Source: Dicyema japonicum
Taxonomy: Eukaryota; Animalia; Dicyemida
Reading direction: 5' to 3'
Assembly: GCA_011109175.1 (NCBI GenBank)
Contig: RDEW01000005.1
Location: 838,124 to 902,123 of the forward strand
DNA length: 64,000 bases
This document shows positions 22,471 to 35,164 of this stretch, in pieces (position 1 is the stretch's first letter; every line of letters begins with the position of its first letter). The position numbers were made by a program, and so were the translations under genes. The notes beneath the pieces were generated by a model. That model saw only the letters and a list, made by a program, of their open reading frames with translations, ran no database searches and was not told the origin of the DNA.

Positions 22471-23013
22471 GAGTTTGTTGACTTTTAATATTTTATTTTT
22501 TTTGAATTTTCATTAAGCGGCATACGTGTATGTCCACAGAATTCTTCCAAGATGTCACGATTTAATCCTCCATGATTATATTCGCTGGCATGCTTGGGTG
22601 CAAAACACACAACCAAACAGATTCCAGGGCTCGAAGACTATTACATATGGACATTTTGGACTATCTTAGAATGAACTCTTCCTTCTCACTCGCATTGCCC
22701 ATCTAAGGCTTAAAAAAGTGAAGTTGTCTTTCGTGTAATGAATCGAATTCCTTCTCCTTCAGCTTAGTGATTACAATCCCCACGAATTATAGCGAAGATC
22801 TTTTCAAAAAAGCCTCCTACGTTCTATGACGAAGTGTTCGCAATCTCCAGAGAAATCACCACAGAAAGAATCACGTGACTCCATCCGTTTGATCTCGTGT
22901 TTTTCGTCATTGTAGAACCAGTTGCCAATTAGTCCGGCTCTATCTTAAGCTGTTGTCGAACTATTAAATTTCTAAAATATAAATTTTGCAAGTTTTCCAT
23001 TTTAAGTCTATTT

Positions 23014-23330
23014 TTGGTGAGACGGAGGGGTACTCCTTTGAAAATGTCTAGAAAGCTGAAGAACAAGAGAATGTTTCAATTCAATTACCTTTCTATACGA
23101 AACGACAAATGGATGCAGCCTCGTCGAGAACCATGGAAAATATTTGTTAGTATGTCTACCGCTGATTCAAACGACCATGGCACTATAAATGTCTATGCAC
23201 CACACTGTGGAATGGTGGCCACAGATATGGGAGACCTATTTGGAGTTATGGAAACCTCATTAATAATTATGATAGTTGTCTTAGGAAATTCCATGAAAAC
23301 ATTGAAGGGAGTTGAAATCAACAGATGACC
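23014..23330 (+). mobile_element. RTE-like AP endonuclease (EEP) remnant
   Basis: TINVYAPH...IVVLGNS corresponds to the EEP motifs NVYAP and xxxGDFN. Confidence 0.55.
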
Positions 23331-23490
23331 TAGACTTATTGAGATCAATAGCAAATAGTGGAAGAGTGTCTTCCACTCCTCAGGGGACTATAGTTCTCGT
23401 AAAGTGCTACAATATAATTGAAGAAACATCAATTTAATCGTACGTAGACAAGGCAGATTTTATTTTTTTTAATTCAAAAAAATAAAAAAA

Positions 23491-26224
23491 TCAGAAATCC
23501 TGTTTGATGTCTAATTTTATTTGGTCCGCTGTAGATTTCGACCTTCCCCTAGCAGGACTCTTCAACTCAGATGTTAGGTCATGCACATTAACAGGACTAA
23601 CAATTTGGTCCAAGTAAACACAGCTTTTCCCAACAATATAAACACTCGTCACCAGCTTCGTCAAAATCAGACTAAAATAACCGGAAAAACCAACCAGATA
23701 AAGAAAAGCACAAAAATTATAACGTTGGGATATCCACGTGCACCACAGGCACAATAGTTCTCAAAAGCAGCGCAGCCAGAGCCAGTGGAAGGAAGCTCAT
23801 CTTCCGTGAGACAATGTCGCTGTGATCGGAGGCTGCCCTCCGTTGCCTAGAGTTGATCAAATCCAGGGCAAGTCGGCACTTGAAGGAGAAATAGTTCTAG
23901 ACTAAACAGAAATCAAAACAGTATGGGAGAGGGAAGAGACACGTGTCACAAAAGAGTGCTTTATCCAATCAACGACACATTCCACGGCAAAGGCTATGAG
24001 AATAAACGGAAGCAGATTTCTCAGATGAGCTGGAATTTCAAAGTACAGAAAACCTAATTTCCAGCCAACATCCGACAGATTACGAATCGAAACCACACTG
24101 AGGAGGATTGCCAAATGGAAGCGCTCCCTCACATCCCAGCACGCCAAAGTGAAGTGAGTGTCCTTATTGAAGACTCGGAAGACGTTGGTTTTGATTTCAA
24201 TAAACTAGCAATAATAATTCCTCAGACATTATTCGACATCATTATAGTGAACAGTTCTGCACTGTGAGAGTTGAAGGCCACGTGGAGCACAGTCGCCTGC
24301 AGCAGCACAAGAATGAGTGCACAACTACAAAAATCAATAAAATGTCAAATATCAAGTCACTCATATTCAATTGCAGGTAAACAGTAATTATATGCGAATT
24401 ATCATTAATTAGCTGACAATTTGGACAAAAATGCAAATTATAACTTGAATAGTTGAAATTTGAGCGTAATTTGTAAAAAGAATATTTTGGCAGGATTTCA
24501 CAATCTTGTGATAAATACATAATCTAAGGCAAAGCGATAATTATTTACTCCTACAGAATCAATAGGTTATGAAAGAATATCCTCAGCTAACAAAGTGATC
24601 TCGGACCAACAGAGAATGGAGATAATCAGGGAATAAGGAACTAAAGTTAGGTGAGGTAAATGCAGTATAACCAACAAAAAATTGATTTAATAAAAATGGA
24701 CAAATACAAAAATAAACCGATAATTATCACTAAATGCATAAATCAGCAAAGCAATCCCACAAATTATTATTAAACAATCACCATTGTTACACAATAACTC
24801 AATTAAACGGCGGAAATAAGGAAACGCCGACTCAGCAAAATTAAGGCAGCAATAAAAACTATCACTAGGCTGGGATTAAAGAGTAAAGGTACAATATATC
24901 AATTATTATAGAGAAGCAGCTAAGACCAGCAACATGAGATACTGTACCACGTGCCAATATGAGGTAACCACTACACCACTAGCAATCTAGACAAGTAAGC
25001 TTGCTAAAGAAATCCAGCTGGAGTAACAATTGGGAGAGCAGCAAAGCAAATATGGGAGCTAAAACAGGAACTACTTCGAAATACCATAAAAAACGAGGAT
25101 ACCAAATTAATTCGTTATAATCCACAAATAGAATTTAATTAAGAATAACAGTCAAATCAATGAAAGCTTAATGAATACCAGCAAAAAGGCAAATAAACAA
25201 AATGACTCAAATAAACCATAGGCAGAAAAATGAACACATATCACCCCAATCAGAATATATATGAGCACACATATCGATAAGCAAAAATAAGCCTTCACCA
25301 CATCAGATCTCCTCATTAGACCTGAGTGAGTAGCCCGACTTAGCATTTACGCTCGAGCAAACAACCGACTCATTCACTAAAGGGACCCGGGTAAATAAAT
25401 AATGGTCATTCAAGAATCAAGGAAATAGTAAAAATCAAAAAATCATCAAAATTAAGCTAACCGTTAATATGCACAAAATTATGCGGACAATCAGAACTAA
25501 GCGCAGTCAAGCAAAAACAAGCCAATTACAACAAAAAACTAAAAAGTATAATCAACCAAAAACCCCCAAAACGACAAAACACAGCAAATAGCCGAGGTAG
25601 CAAATAAAGAAGTGACAATTTCGAAATGGCAAAATAATATAGGCATACACATATATAGGATCATCACCAGGTAATCGAAGCTCACATAACGTCCCTCAAC
25701 ACAGGACCAAATGGCTGTGTCGATGATATCACTCCCAATCGAACAGAATAGTTTATCCCCAATCTAAAATAACTCAGAACAGCTACTTCCAGCATATTGA
25801 AGAAAATGAACAATTTGATCAATTTTGAGACCGAATCAGGTGGTACAGCACATTCAAGTCGATTCGTGACAAAAAACAGCTCGTCAACAAAATTATGAAC
25901 ATCTTGAACAAATCGTTACGGTCCGCAGCGTCCAGCTGTCGTCTTTGGCTGAAACTCAGGATTTACGAATACATCAGTAATCGCTTAATCGAGAACAAAC
26001 AGCGAATCGGCATCAACGTGAAAATATACAGGAATATGTCCAGACACTGCACAAGTCCGAAAAATATAAACTTTTGGTGAAAATCTAATTACCTTTTCAA
26101 ATTCAAAGGGAATCGAAAGGAAGGATTTCACTGCCTGCCTTTTGGAGTCAAAGCCTTCTTGGTCATATGCTGGGTAAAAGACTTTCTTGAGCTCATTTTC
26201 TACGAACTGGTAGAAAAGTGACAT
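23491..26224 (-). CDS. TAPT1: Transmembrane anterior posterior transformation protein 1 (DUF747/Emp65 family)
   Basis: IPFEFEK/FIFFGLVQCLDIFLYIFTLMPIR; LYHLIRSQNLIKLFIFFNMLE; QATVLHVAFNSHSAELFTIMMSNN/FIEIKTNVF; DVRERF; VDWIKHSF; SDHSDIVSRKMSFLPL. Tiny introns plus one 1324-nt intron at 24325-25648. Confidence 0.92.
24560..25640 (-). pseudogene. Putative NUMT: degenerate nad2-like (Proton_antipo_M) sequence inside the TAPT1 intron
   Basis: Strong G+T bias on the minus strand and hydrophobic frames. Collinear motifs FSEWVG (TGA=W), RRSDVVKAYF, YPRFLWYFEV, ILARGTVSHVAG and LPHLT parallel the ND2 motifs WxGLE, RSTEAAxKYF, PFHFWVPEV, ILAYSSITHMG and LPPLT. Confidence 0.55.
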
Positions 26225-26399
26225 TCAAGAGATAAATGCCGACTAAACACAGAATTTGAATTTAATCGTGAATTTTTTTAATATTTTTAAATTTATTAAC
26301 AATTGAATTTATTTATTATTAAATTATATAAAATTATATGCAATTGTGTTTGACCTACGATTTTGTTATTACGAAAGCATCCGAAGAGTCGATGATAAT

Positions 26400-26700
26400 A
26401 AAATACTACAATGGCCCCTTCCTCCAATGACCAATCAGAATCCTCTCTTCCGAGGGACGTATGGGTAAACCTGACTCGTCTAAAATGTGACCACCCACCC
26501 GATTTCCTCTTTCCCTTTTGTTACCTATGCGTGGTGACAACAATCACCTATTTTAATGTCATGAATTAGCACAACGTTCGTCTACAATGCTTGGACTGAC
26601 CGATCAATGGGAGCGACCGGCATTTGCTGCGTCCTATTTAATAGTGCTGGCATCCTACAAGTTAGTGAGGCCGGGGTTACTTAACTAACTAACTACCTAC
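26400..26700 (+). mobile_element. 3' end of an I/Jockey-group-like LINE with (TAAC)n-like tail
   Basis: SLPRDVWVNLTRLKCDH...CYLC...WERPAFAA...gaggccggggtt followed by taactaactaact. Homologous to the end of the 60283-61525 element (SLPRKIRIGLARLRCGH...WERPV...gaagccggggtt). Confidence 0.7.
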
Positions 26701-26774
26701 TTTTTCAGTTAAGTGTAGACGTGTCTTAATTTCACAAATGTCCTAAAAGCGTTTGAGAATTCAAATAACTATCC

Positions 26775-27290
26775 TTCTTACTTTCAACACCAGAAAACTT
26801 CAAAAATTCGACCAAGAGACGCACTTTGTGTCAAAACATGGCGGATTGGTATGCTGCCTGCAGGAAACTAAGAGGACAGACGGATTGTACGAGAAGTATT
26901 GAAACTATGATTCCTTCGGATTCGAGAAACTGGTCATTAATTTTTCTACAACACAAGGAAGTTGTCCCTTGAAAGTTAAAGGAAGGATCTTTCATTGCAA
27001 CTTTGAAAAATCCTTAAGAACTTTACCAGTTCTACGAGTAATAGAAAGGACAATGACAGAATTTCAATTTTCCCAATGGCTGCCCGTCGCAGGAGACTGG
27101 AATGCGAAGGTAGGAATCCTAAATGAAAATGATGCCTCTATCGGTCGCCACAGAAGAGGAATCAGAAACTTCCCGGATCGACACTGATAAACTTCTGTCA
27201 AATATTTGTCTTCCTTCATGCAACAATTGCTTTCAACACTCACTCTTATAAAACTACGTAGACTTGAAAAGAATTTGTGCTAAAGGGAAA
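26775..27290 (+). mobile_element. RTE-like EEP endonuclease remnant
   Basis: TFNTRKL...CLQETK...VAGDWNAKVG...IGRHRRGIRN...INFCQ. Confidence 0.7.
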
Positions 27291-31374: not shown

Positions 31375-32418
31375 TCTTTTTCTGACAATTTTACCTCAAG
31401 TTTTTTTTAGTAAATTTTAATTTATGATAAATGTAATTAAATTAACACAGCCAACCATCCAAAGTGGACCCCGCAGATATTATCGACGTTGCTTCACTTT
31501 TCACGATTGGTACAGAAATCAACTGGAGAAGCCACCGGGTCTCATTTATCTTAAATTAACGAGTTAAAAATCACTTTTTATGACAAGATTCCATTATGGT
31601 CTACAACCACGCAATGGGAGTTATCCCTTATAATTTATAATGTAAAATAATGAATTAAATTTCAGATTAAAAAAAATTAATTTATTTACCTTCGAATGAC
31701 AAGAAAACGTTCTACCCACTTACCATCCAAGAGTCTTCCTTAATATTATCCGTAGAGCGTCATCCACTTTGAGTGTTTTGATTGCGGCTATAAAACTTGC
31801 TTACAATACCGTCCCATGTTTTACTAATGTATTATATTTACTTTAACGTTGTGCATTAACTCTAATTTTTACTTTACAGCATATTGTATTTATGCAATTC
31901 GAACTGCTTTGGCATTTCTTATATGTCTTCATTGTAGTTTCTTTTAACATACGACCACACCTTATCGCCGAGTGGTCGACACTTACGACGCTCCAATTTT
32001 TCTATCATTGCTAAGAATGAAGCAAATCAATCCCTTTTTATGTTTGTTCGATCAAGATGTCTTCCAAAGTCATTTTAGTAAGAACCAATTCATAGAACTG
32101 ATTCATATATTTTGATTGTACCAAATGTAATGACTCGTAGAATCCCTGCGTTCCTTAGACAAACTTCGACTTCTTTTCCAGATCTCGGAAAATTGTGGTA
32201 GTATTCGTTCACTTTTATGGCTAATAAACACCAAAACCTCTTCCAAGATTGTATCTTGGCAGAAGAGTCTTTTCTTGTTTCCAGGTTACAAGTGAATTCA
32301 ATGCAGGACAAAATTTTCTGTACATTTTGTTGAATGGGTTGTTGAGGCGATCAAATATTGACATTCAATATAGAGGCCTGTCAAATATAGAAGACGTTGC
32401 TTTTTCCATCCTCTAGTA

Positions 32419-32445
32419 CAGTGGTTCCCAACCTGGGTTCCGCGG
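32419..32445 (+). mobile_element. Isolated hAT Charlie/Buster-type terminus
   Basis: CAGTGGTTCCCAACCTGGG preceded by CTCTAGTA, close to the Charlie target consensus NTCTAGAN. Confidence 0.55.
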
Positions 32446-32529
32446 GATATGGGCATGACATGACAATAACACAGCGAAAAACAAAATTTTAAGAATAAAT
32501 AAAAATATATTCTACAATAATAAATATAG

Positions 32530-34964
32530 TCAAGAATTGGTCCTCGGAATGGCCCTAATGGAAATATCGCGCACAGCTCTAAATTCCCCACAATTATTCA
32601 AATGTTCATTTTCAAGTCGAAAATAATTCCAAACGAATCGTCTGCACACGGTAACAAATACTCCAACCTAAAGATCTCCACAATGACGAGAATTGTCCTC
32701 AGCGGTTCTGTCGCGTTAAAAATCCTAACTAGAACCCAAGAAAATCGAGCTATGCAATTTTCCACAACAGCAAAATAGTAAACCGCCTAAATGAACCAAA
32801 TCCATACCACGTGGGAATAAATCAGCTCATCCCTAAGGAGGAAGTACTCCTGAGGTTTCTCGAAGCTAAAAATACTCCAATCCATCCAATAATCCCAATA
32901 TAAGCAGTATAGGGTTTTGATCAAAGAAGTCACGACGACCAAGGCTACAAGGTTGATGCTTGGCGAAATGATCTTCCCGTTTTTCCAAATCCAACATAAA
33001 AATGGCAAAAATATTCAAAATTCCGCTTAAATATTTTCCCGCGTTGACTAAATGCGGAAAGAACTTTCTAGTGTCGACGTAACGTCTCACACATTGGAGA
33101 AGCCGAATACAGAAGGGAATCGTCGCGAGGAAGTACAACCCGTAAAAGTGACCCTCCACCTCATAATCTGCAAAAATTTAGTTTCCTCTACCTTCACTGC
33201 TTTCATGAACTGCCTTGGAGTATAAAATAAACAGTTCGATCTCAATCATTAATTCCGCCATGCTGGTTAGCTGATCCCCCAGCCAAAAGTCCGCAAATGT
33301 GACTTTGAACAATCCGGCGGAAAACAATCGTCCCTTAAATGAGTGAGAAGCCAACAATTTGTTTGATCAACCAAAATCGACTGGAATAAAGGACTGAGAT
33401 CGGATTCAACAAAAGTACGCAAATAACGACCCAGAATACAAGTATCGGTGTAAAATGATCTATTTCAAGAAAGTCGCTCAGTAAAAAACTCGTTATACTC
33501 AAATTCACAATAGACTAATAAATCCAGAAATCTAAATTTTTTATTTAAATAAAAATAATTAATTAAAAAATATATTAAAAATTTAAATAAATAAAAAGTT
33601 AAAAAATAAGACAGATAAAGAAAATCAATCCAACAAAAAGGGAAACAAACCAAAAAGTAATGCATGTACGATAAATGGTCACGTGGGTTAAGTTCGAATA
33701 TCAGCACATGGTTGACACCGGCTTTATTCCACCCATAAACGTTAAAGCCCAAGAGAAACATAAAAACGGAAATAAGCATAGGTCCACGGTAAACGACATT
33801 AAATCTATCCCAGTCATACTCCTGCTTAGAATAGAAAGCTTAAACGTCAGAATGCTGATAACCAATCAAAATGTTGACTACTAACATCAAAAGATTTGCA
33901 GCAAAGAAAAATCCGGCAAAAAACGTAGTAACTGGAAAGAATTTCTAAATCAATCACCATACATTTTGAAACGGAGGAACCCGCAGTTTAGTCATTGCCT
34001 TAGATCGGTTTCCTCCTTCCAGGTGATTTATAAATAATTTCTGGGAGTAAAAGTCATTGGAAACCTCAATTTCGTCAATAACGACATCAACGCTGTTATC
34101 TCTGCTAAAATAAGCACTGTCGATATACTCACGTTTAAAGTTCATTCCCCAAGAAGAATTTATTAACTGTCAAGGTAACCGTTTAAATTTTATTTACAAA
34201 AAAATAAATAATAATAAAAAAGGTTAACAAAGAGAATTTGAAAATTTTAATAAAAAATTAATAAAATTTAAATTAATTATTATATTAAAAAATTTAAATT
34301 TTTAATAAAATATTATGGAAATTTTACTTTGTCGTGCTTTTTAAGGATTTTTCGAAATCCTGTTGAATTCAAGGATTGGTAGTTTTGAATGAGAACGGCA
34401 GACAGGTAAAGTTCTTGAAAGGCAAATTTAAACTTTCTGTTAGTTTTTACGTAAATTTTTGAATTTTTATTTTCCATATTCTGTGCTTCGTTGAATGAGG
34501 ATCGCAATTCGTTAAATTTTCTCTCAATTGATGCTTTGTTTTCTACGAAAATAGAGTTTTACAAAACCTTTATAAAAATCGTCAATTTTTCTCAATTCAT
34601 TCCTTAAAAGGTCGCAGAAAAATTCTCGAAATCCTCTTTCATCGGATTCGCCCTTTTGTCTCTTGAAAGATAAATTTAAAATTTGATGGAATGCCCACAA
34701 CATCGCATTTCGATAAATATAATTTATTTAAAATTTAAATTTATTTTAAAATATAATTTATATTAAATAAATTTAAATAGGATAATTAACATTGATTATT
34801 ATTTATGACGCTTATCGACAGCCTAATAAACACTTACTTTTTTCTTTTTCTTTGTAAAGCAACTCCTTAAGTTTCTAGATATTAAGCCATAAGTACTCCA
34901 TAGAAATGTACTGAATTCTCCATTCTGGAGTTATATGGGCGTCTAAATGCTTTCGAAACTTCAT
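32530..34964 (-). CDS. XPR1: SPX-EXS phosphate exporter XPR1/SYG1
   Basis: [20 protein letters not shown]; [29 protein letters not shown] (SPX); [13 protein letters not shown]; [11 protein letters not shown]; [27 protein letters not shown] (EXS). Confidence 0.95.
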
Positions 34965-35164
34965 GAATATTGAAATTATCGCATGCATAAATTATATACG
35001 GCAACTGCGCTCCGGCATGAATATTTGTACAGTTTTTATGCCAGAAACGATTGTTAATGTCGTTCTCTCAAATGTTGGGAGTCAATCTAAGATTTCCCAT
35101 TGTCCGGTCAATCGGAACGTAAGTAGGTTGACTGAAGGAATAGAAAATGATTAATTGTTTTGTC

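What the first reader, a model, noticed from the sequence alone, without database searches (positions are those of the whole stretch)
24325..25648. 1324-nt TAPT1 intron containing a mitochondrial-type nad2-like insert
The intron is about 50 times the local norm and is bounded exactly where TAPT1 reads ILYM-F|VHSFLVLLQ. Most of it has a sharp G+T strand bias unlike its surroundings. One minus frame (~25446-25140) has 7 TGA codons in hydrophobic context versus 2 internal TAA, as expected for TGA=Trp. Five motifs appear in ND2 order with roughly ND2 spacing (FSEWVG; RRSDVVKAYF; YPRFLWYFEV; ILARGTVSHVAG; LPHLT). It is probably a NUMT of a very divergent complex I gene. In lineages with fast-evolving, poorly annotated mitogenomes it could reveal an unrecognised nad2, and it shows that a tiny-intron spliceosome can handle a kb-scale intron.
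Basis: partly seen in the sequence, partly recalled or inferred. Interest (0 to 1): 0.8.

Follow-up and report, generated by a model that had tools for sequence, protein, structure and literature searches.

The report
Long intron in tiny-intron TAPT1 gene
A 1.3-kb stretch interrupting a membrane-protein gene (TAPT1) in a parasite genome whose introns are normally about 23 bases is a genuine, spliced intron at an ancient intron position, and nothing supports the idea that it is a captured mitochondrial nad2 gene.

Summary
The intron is real; the mitochondrial reading finds no support in any test.

**Intron.** The window is most likely Dicyema japonicum. A TAPT1/DUF747 gene lies on the minus strand (23491-26224), with seven introns of 22-24 nt and one of 1,324 nt (24325-25648).
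- An RNA-like public run holds a contig that joins 24324 to 25649, exactly the boundaries proposed.
- About 11-17% of the signal at the junctions is unspliced.
- DNA-like runs carry the insert at single-copy depth and bridge both junctions.
- A tardigrade TAPT1 gene has an intron in the same codon and the same phase, so the position is ancestral.

**No nad2 or NUMT signal.**
- Every frame has 13-19 TAA/TAG codons, and 14-20 after read-based correction.
- The longest stretch open under mitochondrial code is no longer than chance (P=0.10).
- There is no three-base periodicity, although the flanking exons have it.
- Pfam, PDB, word and Atlas searches of the pieces give no complex I hit.
- The five "ND2 motifs" lie in three different frames.

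**Composition.** The G+T bias equals that of the gene's own tiny introns (chi-square P=0.88).

Earlier notes of this scan describe the tiny introns of this genome. None describes this intron or a NUMT.

It is an unusually long member of a known kind, of modest interest.

The parts
24325..25648 (-). Long spliceosomal intron. It is 1,324 nt in the window and 1,327 nt after three read-supported single-base insertions. It is GT..AG and phase 1, and splits the Phe codon between ILYM and VHSF.
   Evidence: The X5 contig joins 24324|25649 at depth 53.4. Unspliced unitigs have depths 10.8 and 6.5. DNA contigs bridge both junctions. Gene model.
25643..25648 (-). 5' splice site, GTATGC on the sense strand
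   Evidence: Sequence; junction in the RNA contig
24325..24349 (-). 3' end of the intron: a T-rich tract ending TTTTTGTAG, with possible branch sites TTGAC and TTGAT 10-25 nt upstream
   Evidence: Sequence. The branch site is inferred only.
23491..26224 (-). TAPT1/DUF747 gene: ATG at 26224-26222, TGA stop at 23493-23491, nine exons, about 416 aa
   Evidence: Pfam PF05346 hits on five exon pieces in profile order; gene model; 609 homologues in the representative library
26071..26092 (-). Tiny intron 1 (22 nt in the window, 23 with the read-supported base)
   Evidence: gap total of X5 record 29
25949..25972 (-). Tiny intron 2 (24 nt)
   Evidence: The 24-nt version fits the 70-nt gap total of X5 record 29.
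25764..25786 (-). Tiny intron 3 (23 nt), at the NMLE| position shared with the tardigrade
24205..24227 (-). Tiny intron 5 (23 nt), at the SNN|F position shared with the tardigrade and Acropora
24030..24053 (-). Tiny intron 6 (24 nt, in frame and stop-free, so invisible to ORF reading)
   Evidence: The 47-nt gap total of X5 record 26 equals 23+24; located
23897..23919 (-). Tiny intron 7 (23 nt)
   Evidence: Acropora exon boundary at the aligned residue
23672..23694 (-). Tiny intron 8 (23 nt)
   Evidence: Acropora exon boundary at the aligned residue
24311..24312 (.). One base is missing from the window sequence here. This causes the apparent frameshift just downstream of the long intron.
   Evidence: table 4: A put in behind 24311 at full depth in X1 and X2 and most of the depth in X4. 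The RNA contig has an extra G (table 5c).

Best explanation
The 1,324-nt stretch is an ordinary U2-type GT-AG spliceosomal intron of a TAPT1/DUF747 gene. It is exceptional only in being about 57 times longer than the gene's other seven introns (22-24 nt).

**Shown**
- It is present in genomic DNA at single-copy depth.
- It is removed from most transcripts exactly at 25648/24325.
- About 11-17% of the RNA signal at the junctions is still unspliced.
- It sits in the same codon and phase as an intron of a tardigrade TAPT1 gene.
- It has no coding signal on either strand.
- Its T- and G-rich sense strand has the same base composition as the tiny introns of the same gene.

**Inferred**
- It is an ancestral intron that either escaped the genome-wide shrinkage or was enlarged long ago by DNA that has since decayed to plain intron composition.
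- Its U-richness, GTATGC donor and T-rich tract before the TAG acceptor are what let the same spliceosome define it.
For: - **Spliced form.** X5 record 26 (depth 53.4) carries 30 nt of the upstream exon, starting at 25649, joined directly to 24324. Its other gaps, and those of records 25 and 29, equal the sums of the tiny introns. X5 has zero depth in the intergenic DNA, so it behaves as RNA.
- **Unspliced form.** X5 record 28 (24960-25678, depth 10.8) crosses the donor site. Record 27 (24397-25003) has depth 6.5.
- **DNA.** Contigs of X1, X2 and X4 inside the insert have depths 36-59, 75-91 and 737. The flanks have 35-75, 70-80 and 645-866. X1 24277-24611 and X2 25448-25729 bridge the two junctions.
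- **Host gene.** PF05346 hits on exon pieces run in profile order, with the insert between positions 91 and 97.
- **Ancestral position.** The tardigrade reads LLYV-L(C|TG)-VHS across an intron of about 87 nt. This gene reads ILYM-F(T|TT)-VHS. Both are phase 1.
- **Composition.** Tiny introns have A .21, C .14, G .16, T .49. The long intron has A .22, C .15, G .18, T .45. Chi-square P=0.88 between them. The long intron differs from the exons (P=3e-9) and from the intergenic flanks (P=4e-13).
- **No coding signal.**
Against: - X5 is labelled 'DNA?' by the tool. That it is RNA is my inference from its behaviour.
- Contigs carry no strand, so the low-depth intronic signal could in principle include an independent transcript.
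- The composition match rests on only 135 nt of tiny-intron interior. A noisier window-wide set of 53 candidate tiny introns shows the same direction of skew but weaker (T .32, A .25).
- The source of the extra length is unknown.
- This is the most skewed kilobase of the window, which an ordinary intron need not be.
Confidence: 0.82

Rival explanations
1. The intron is ancestral, but most of its length is a very old, fully decayed piece of mitochondrial or other circular DNA (a NUMT, possibly nad2) that was inserted into it.
For: - Dicyemids keep mitochondrial genes on minicircles of 344-1605 bp. They also have thousands of non-coding circles and circles with decayed nad2, nad4 and cox3 copies (PMC6543705).
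- nad2 was not recovered from D. japonicum (bioRxiv 10.1101/282285).
- The insert size fits a minicircle.
- One frame is open under code 5 for 159 codons and holds many TGA.
Against: - The 159-codon stretch is within chance (P=0.10), and so is the TGA excess (P=0.06).
- Each frame has 14-20 TAA/TAG codons after correction.
- Periodicity is at the level of shuffled sequence (P=0.48), while the exons score P=0.003-0.017.
- There is no Pfam, PDB, word or Atlas match to complex I and no tRNA or Rfam hit.
- No high-depth contig at 85% identity or more lies on the insert in the DNA or RNA runs.
- The composition is already explained by intron composition.
Confidence: 0.05
2. The extra length is a decayed transposable-element fragment, for example an antisense LINE piece (the plus strand is A-rich, as LINE sense strands often are), lodged in an ancestral tiny intron.
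For: - 49% of the D. japonicum genome is repeats, with many LINEs (PMC6736024).
- The plus strand is 45% A.
- High-copy repeats lie just outside the gene.
Against: - The insert is single copy at 85% likeness or more in three DNA runs.
- Nothing else in the window resembles it at nucleotide or protein level.
- No Pfam domain is found on either strand.
- There are no terminal inverted repeats, no tandem structure and no poly-A end.
Confidence: 0.1
3. The stretch is removed at the DNA level, as an excised circle or by chromatin elimination as reported for dicyemid somatic cells, and not, or not only, by RNA splicing.
For: - Extrachromosomal circles and chromatin diminution are reported in dicyemids (PMC6543705 abstract).
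- A 4-nt TGTA occurs at both ends.
Against: - DNA depth over the insert equals the flanks in X1, X2 and X4.
- No deleted or circular joint is listed for the DNA runs.
- The ends are GT..AG.
- The position is a conserved intron position.
- Unspliced and spliced forms coexist in the RNA-like run and sum to the exon depth.
Confidence: 0.02

Closest known systems
Dicyemid micro-introns (Ogino 2010; Aruga 2007, PMC2222250; Lu 2019, PMC6736024; Zverkov 2019, PMC6543705; PMC13644364)
   Same: Same gene, same GT..AG ends, same U-rich base composition and same conservation of ancestral intron positions. It is spliced in the same transcripts.
   Different: Its length is 1,324 nt. Published values are a mean of 26 nt in the first 16 introns described, a median of 27 nt in Dicyema sp. 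and a mean of 38 nt in the D. japonicum annotation. It has a recognisable T-rich tract before the acceptor. About 11-17% unspliced signal is seen.
Orthologous TAPT1 intron of the tardigrade Ramazzottius varieornatus (GCA_001949185.1, locus L002)
   Same: Same codon (the residue just before the conserved VHS) and same phase 1. Two further introns of the gene also coincide (after NMLE, after SNN).
   Different: The tardigrade intron is about 87 nt. No sequence similarity between the two introns was looked for or is expected.
NUMTs / mitochondrial nad2 (Pfam Proton_antipo_M)
   Same: Only a T- and G-rich strand and many TGA triplets, both of which follow from base composition.
   Different: There is no open frame under code 5, no periodicity, no profile or structure-database match, no close mitochondrial relative in the reads, and no tRNA.

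Membership tests
U2-type GT-AG spliceosomal intron | GT at the 5' end and AG at the 3' end on the transcribed strand | tested here: met
   GTATGC...TTGTAG on the minus strand at 25648 and 24325
U2-type GT-AG spliceosomal intron | Absent from mature RNA with exact exon-exon junction, present in genomic DNA | tested here: met
   The X5 contig joins 24324|25649 at depth 53.4. DNA-like runs hold the insert at flank depth and bridge both junctions. That X5 is RNA is inferred from its missing tiny introns and zero intergenic depth.
U2-type GT-AG spliceosomal intron | Removal restores the reading frame of a conserved protein | tested here: met
   With the read-supported base after 24311, the junction reads ILYMFVHSFLVLLQATVLHVAFNSHS. 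This aligns without a gap to TAPT1 homologues. Pfam DUF747 is continuous across it.
U2-type GT-AG spliceosomal intron | Position shared with orthologues (ancestral intron) | tested here: met
   The tardigrade intron is in the same codon and phase. Only one other genome could be read at this site. The Acropora locus lacks the region.
U2-type GT-AG spliceosomal intron | Branch point and lariat | not testable with these tools
   Candidate TTGAC and TTGAT lie upstream of the acceptor by eye only.
NUMT of nad2 (Proton_antipo_M, invertebrate mitochondrial code) | Detectable similarity to ND2 or any complex I protein | tested here: not met
   Pfam at E up to 10 was run on 19 stop-free pieces of both strands. 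PDB chains at E up to 10 were searched with the four motif-bearing pieces. The word search and the Atlas were also run. None gave a complex I hit. Pieces are short (35-66 aa), so sensitivity for a divergent ND2 is limited.
NUMT of nad2 (Proton_antipo_M, invertebrate mitochondrial code) | A frame that is open, or nearly so, when TGA is read as Trp | tested here: not met
   There are 13-19 TAA+TAG codons per sense frame, and 14-20 after read-based correction. The longest open run is 159 codons, P=0.10.
NUMT of nad2 (Proton_antipo_M, invertebrate mitochondrial code) | Residual codon periodicity | tested here: not met
   Period-3 power is 0.69 against a simulated 0.69 (P=0.48). Flanking exons give P=0.003-0.017.
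NUMT of nad2 (Proton_antipo_M, invertebrate mitochondrial code) | Similarity to the organism's own mitochondrial DNA | tested here: inconclusive
   No high-depth contig at 85% likeness or more lies on the insert in three DNA runs and one RNA run.
Transposable element insertion | Multiple copies, terminal repeats or element-encoded domains | tested here: not met
   Single-copy depth; no inverted or tandem repeats; no domains; no relatives in the window. The whole genome could not be searched.
TAPT1 / DUF747 (host gene) | Match to PF05346 above the gathering score | tested here: met
   The 100-aa exon piece scores 79.2 bits (cut-off 25). Three further pieces score above 25 bits, in profile order.

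The most novel reading that the evidence does not exclude
The intron is kept long for a reason. Either regulated retention (the 11-17% unspliced signal) tunes TAPT1 output in a genome that has otherwise purged long introns, or it preserves a fully decayed relic of dicyemid circular or mitochondrial DNA that entered a nuclear intron.
Probability: 0.07. Interest if true: 0.55.

Novelty: new member of a known kind. Interest (0 to 1): 0.25.

Why it matters
Dicyemids and some myxozoans have the shortest introns known in animals, and how their spliceosome measures or defines introns is an open question. Here one transcript carries seven 22-24-nt introns and one 1.3-kb intron, and the long one is mostly spliced. 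This shows that the machinery is not restricted to micro-introns. It also offers a natural substrate for comparing the two modes in a single gene.

The negative result matters too. In T-rich non-coding DNA, hydrophobic 'motifs' and TGA excess arise from composition alone and should not be read as mitochondrial genes. The case also shows that single-base deletions in this assembly create false frameshifts next to real splice sites.

Tried and rejected
- **Ciliate germline IES.** This was my first guess, from the tiny introns and the TA/TGTA at both ends. I dropped it once the genome proved to be a micro-intron animal and DNA depth over the insert equalled the flanks.
- **Copies of the insert elsewhere in the window.** There are none by blastn or by six-frame tblastn.
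- **Internal structure.** There are no inverted repeats, and the only tandem repeat is a 16-nt chance one.
- **RNA genes.** No Rfam family at E up to 1 and no tRNA.
- **Cryptic micro-introns.** I asked whether the intron avoids internal GTA...AG pairs 19-32 nt apart. It has 10 such pairs, against 19 expected at average window composition. Given its own composition the expected number is 12.4 (z=-0.6). There is therefore no evidence of selection beyond composition.
- **Window-wide tiny-intron set.** An automatic ORF-based set of 57 candidates was too noisy, with false positives in long repeat ORFs. It gave only the direction of skew.
- **Acropora locus.** It could not be used for the key site, because the gene model skips the region and the exons are not found in the locus.
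- **Other TAPT1 homologues.** Several looked up for genomic context were transcripts or were not on record.
- **Reading TGA as Trp.** Searches with the insert read through TGA could not be done by reference.

Full report
**What is there.** The window (35% G+C) carries a gene on the minus strand from ATG 26224 to a TGA stop at 23493-23491. Five stop-free exon pieces match Pfam PF05346 (DUF747, the TAPT1 family) in profile order:

| Window coordinates | Profile positions |
|---|---|
| 25822-25962 | 3-38 |
| 25641-25763 | 51-91 |
| 24225-24329 | 97-125 |
| 23905-24204 | 126-217 |
| 23720-23896 | 218-271 |

The 1,324 nt at 24325-25648 fall between profile positions 91 and 97, so they interrupt the protein and do not encode part of it. 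A search of 1.8 billion representative proteins with the 100-aa exon piece found 609 relatives, all alignable as TAPT1-like proteins. Earlier notes of this scan place the genome in the micro-intron animal Dicyema japonicum. The 23-nt introns, the G+C content and the dates of the public runs fit this, but I did not test the species directly.

**Is it an intron?** Public runs were laid on 22800-27000.
- Run X5 (2017) behaves as RNA. It has zero depth in the intergenic DNA on both sides. Its contigs skip 48, 47 and 70 nt within the exonic parts, which is the sum of the tiny introns.
- X5 record 26 (depth 53.4) runs from 23987 to 24311. It then has 14 letters that are 24311-24324 with one extra base, and then 30 letters starting at 25649.
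- On the sense strand the intron starts GTATGC and ends TTTTTGTAG.
- X5 record 28 (depth 10.8) runs from 24960 to 25678 across the donor site. Record 27 (depth 6.5) covers 24397-25003.
- These are 31-mer unitigs, so depths add at the branch. 10.8 + 53.4 is close to the 61.4 of the upstream exon.
- About 17% of the signal at the donor and about 11% further 3' is therefore unspliced.
- The three DNA-like runs of another sample (X1, X2, X4) hold the insert at the depth of the flanks. X1 24277-24611 and X2 25448-25729 bridge the two junctions.
- The assembly is therefore not chimeric here, the insert is single copy, and it is not under-represented in DNA.

**Window errors.** The reads add single bases that the window lacks, after 23726, 24311, 24702, 25282, 25466, 26084 and 26272.
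- The one after 24311 explains a discrepancy.
- With these corrections and one further inferred base at 25826-25829, a complete model results.
- The 47-nt gap total of X5 record 26 shows an additional in-frame 24-nt intron at 24030-24053.
- The gene thus has seven tiny introns of 22-24 nt and one of 1,324 nt (1,327 corrected), a ratio of about 57.

**Is the position old?** The tardigrade Ramazzottius varieornatus TAPT1 gene (protein P0053, locus L002) was mapped onto its DNA.
- It has an intron of about 87 nt after the first base of the Leu codon in LLYV-L-VHS.
- This gene has the long intron after the first base of the Phe codon in ILYM-F-VHS.
- The two residues are aligned. The codon and the phase are the same.
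- Two more introns coincide with the tardigrade (after NMLE and after SNN).
- Five of the tiny-intron positions fall at or within a few residues of Acropora exon boundaries.
- The interruption is therefore an ancestral intron position. It is not a new intron created by DNA landing in an exon.

**Is there a nad2 or any mitochondrial gene inside?**
- Under the invertebrate mitochondrial code, each sense frame has 13-19 TAA+TAG codons.
- The longest open run is 159 codons. That length or more occurs in 10% of first-order Markov simulations.
- The highest TGA count in any frame is 17, which has P=0.06.
- The three indels and six substitutions that the reads support were then applied. Three of the five proposed motifs then fall into one frame, but they are still separated by stop codons. 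The frames still hold 14-20 TAA/TAG codons.
- Period-3 power in 180-nt windows equals the simulated mean (0.69 against 0.69, P=0.48). The flanking exons give P=0.003 and P=0.017.
- In the window as given, the five motifs lie in three frames.
- Pfam at E up to 10 was run on 19 stop-free pieces from both strands. It gave only scattered sub-threshold hits and nothing related to complex I.
- The four motif-bearing pieces gave no complex I chain in the PDB at E up to 10.
- The word-index search of the 64-aa piece found nothing. The ESM Atlas gave a low recognition value and no named neighbour.
- No tRNA and no Rfam family was found.
- No high-depth contig at 85% likeness or more lies on the insert in any run. 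A recent copy of a minicircle would produce one.

One test could not be done: a direct comparison with dicyemid minicircle sequences. The literature shows why the idea was worth testing. Dicyemid mitochondrial genes sit on circles of 344-1605 bp. There are circles with decayed nad2 copies. nad2 was not recovered from D. japonicum.

**What explains the strand bias?** The insert is indeed the most skewed kilobase of the window (AT skew 0.40, 4.2 sd above the mean). The interior of the gene's seven tiny introns has the same composition, as the table shows.

| Sequence (sense strand) | A | C | G | T |
|---|---|---|---|---|
| Seven tiny introns (135 nt) | .21 | .14 | .16 | .49 |
| Long intron | .22 | .15 | .18 | .45 |

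- Chi-square between the two gives P=0.88.
- The long intron differs strongly from the exons (P=3e-9) and from the intergenic flanks (P=4e-13).
- A noisy window-wide set of candidate tiny introns shows the same direction of skew, weaker.
- The bias is therefore what intron sequence of this gene looks like. It does not mark the insert as organellar.
- Whether it reflects transcription-linked mutation or selection for U-rich introns is not resolved.
- The low A content halves the number of cryptic GTA...AG micro-intron pairs, but not beyond what composition predicts.

**Rivals.**
- A decayed transposon fragment is possible. It has no support: single copy, no terminal repeats, no domains and no relatives in the window.
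- DNA-level excision is unlikely, given equal DNA depth, GT-AG ends and a conserved intron position.
- An old organellar fragment inside the intron remains formally open, at about 5%.

**Comparison with what is known.** Published descriptions stress very short, uniform dicyemid introns.
- The first 16 introns described had a mean length of 26.2 nt (PMC2222250).
- Dicyema sp. has a median of 27 nt, with two thirds of predicted introns under 30 nt (PMC6543705).
- The D. japonicum annotation has a mean of 38 nt (PMC6736024).
- D. japonicum splice signals are reduced to GTa...AG (PMC13644364).
- A mean above the median implies a tail of longer predicted introns. I found no description of an RNA-supported kb-scale one in these papers.
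- Other first-stage notes on this genome-140 nt 'long'.

This is therefore a new and extreme member of a known kind, not a new kind.

**Verdict.** The NUMT/nad2 half is unsupported. Interest is modest.

Noticed in passing
window 26325-26747: A high-copy repeat lies just upstream of the TAPT1 start. Summed contig depth is 20-200 times the single-copy level in the three DNA-like runs, and the repeat is also present in the RNA-like run. Many copies end near 26692-26695 and continue into unrelated A/T-rich DNA. There is no Rfam hit and no second copy in the window.
   Followed up: partly
window 23082-23222: A second short high-copy segment lies downstream of the gene. Its depth is about 18-28 times the neighbouring bins in the DNA-like runs. 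There is no second copy in the window.
   Followed up: partly
window 23726, 24311, 24702, 25282, 25466, 26084, 26272 (and probably 25826-25829): The window sequence lacks single bases that the public reads carry at full depth. This is roughly one per 400 nt, often in homopolymer runs. They create false frameshifts in exons, for example right after the long intron, and would mislead any frame-based reading of this assembly.
   Followed up: yes
window 24030-24053 (minus strand): A 24-nt intron that is a multiple of three and has no in-frame stop. An ORF-based model reads straight through it as eight extra residues (GFLYFEIP). The RNA contig's gap total shows that it is spliced.
   Followed up: partly
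window 32400-35000 (minus strand): An SPX-EXS (XPR1-like) membrane-protein gene (Pfam EXS 4.5e-09, SPX 1.4e-04). It is the second most T-skewed stretch of the window. It contains A/T-rich, stop-rich stretches of roughly 150-250 nt (about 33450-33680 and 34170-34330) that may be further non-tiny introns. These were not checked against RNA.
   Followed up: partly
locus L001 (Acropora digitifera GCA_000222465.2, DF971070.1): The public TAPT1 gene model (P0014) lacks the conserved segment from IKLY..NMLEV to ..NSHN. The missing exons are not found in the locus, so there is probably an assembly gap or an annotation error there.
   Followed up: no
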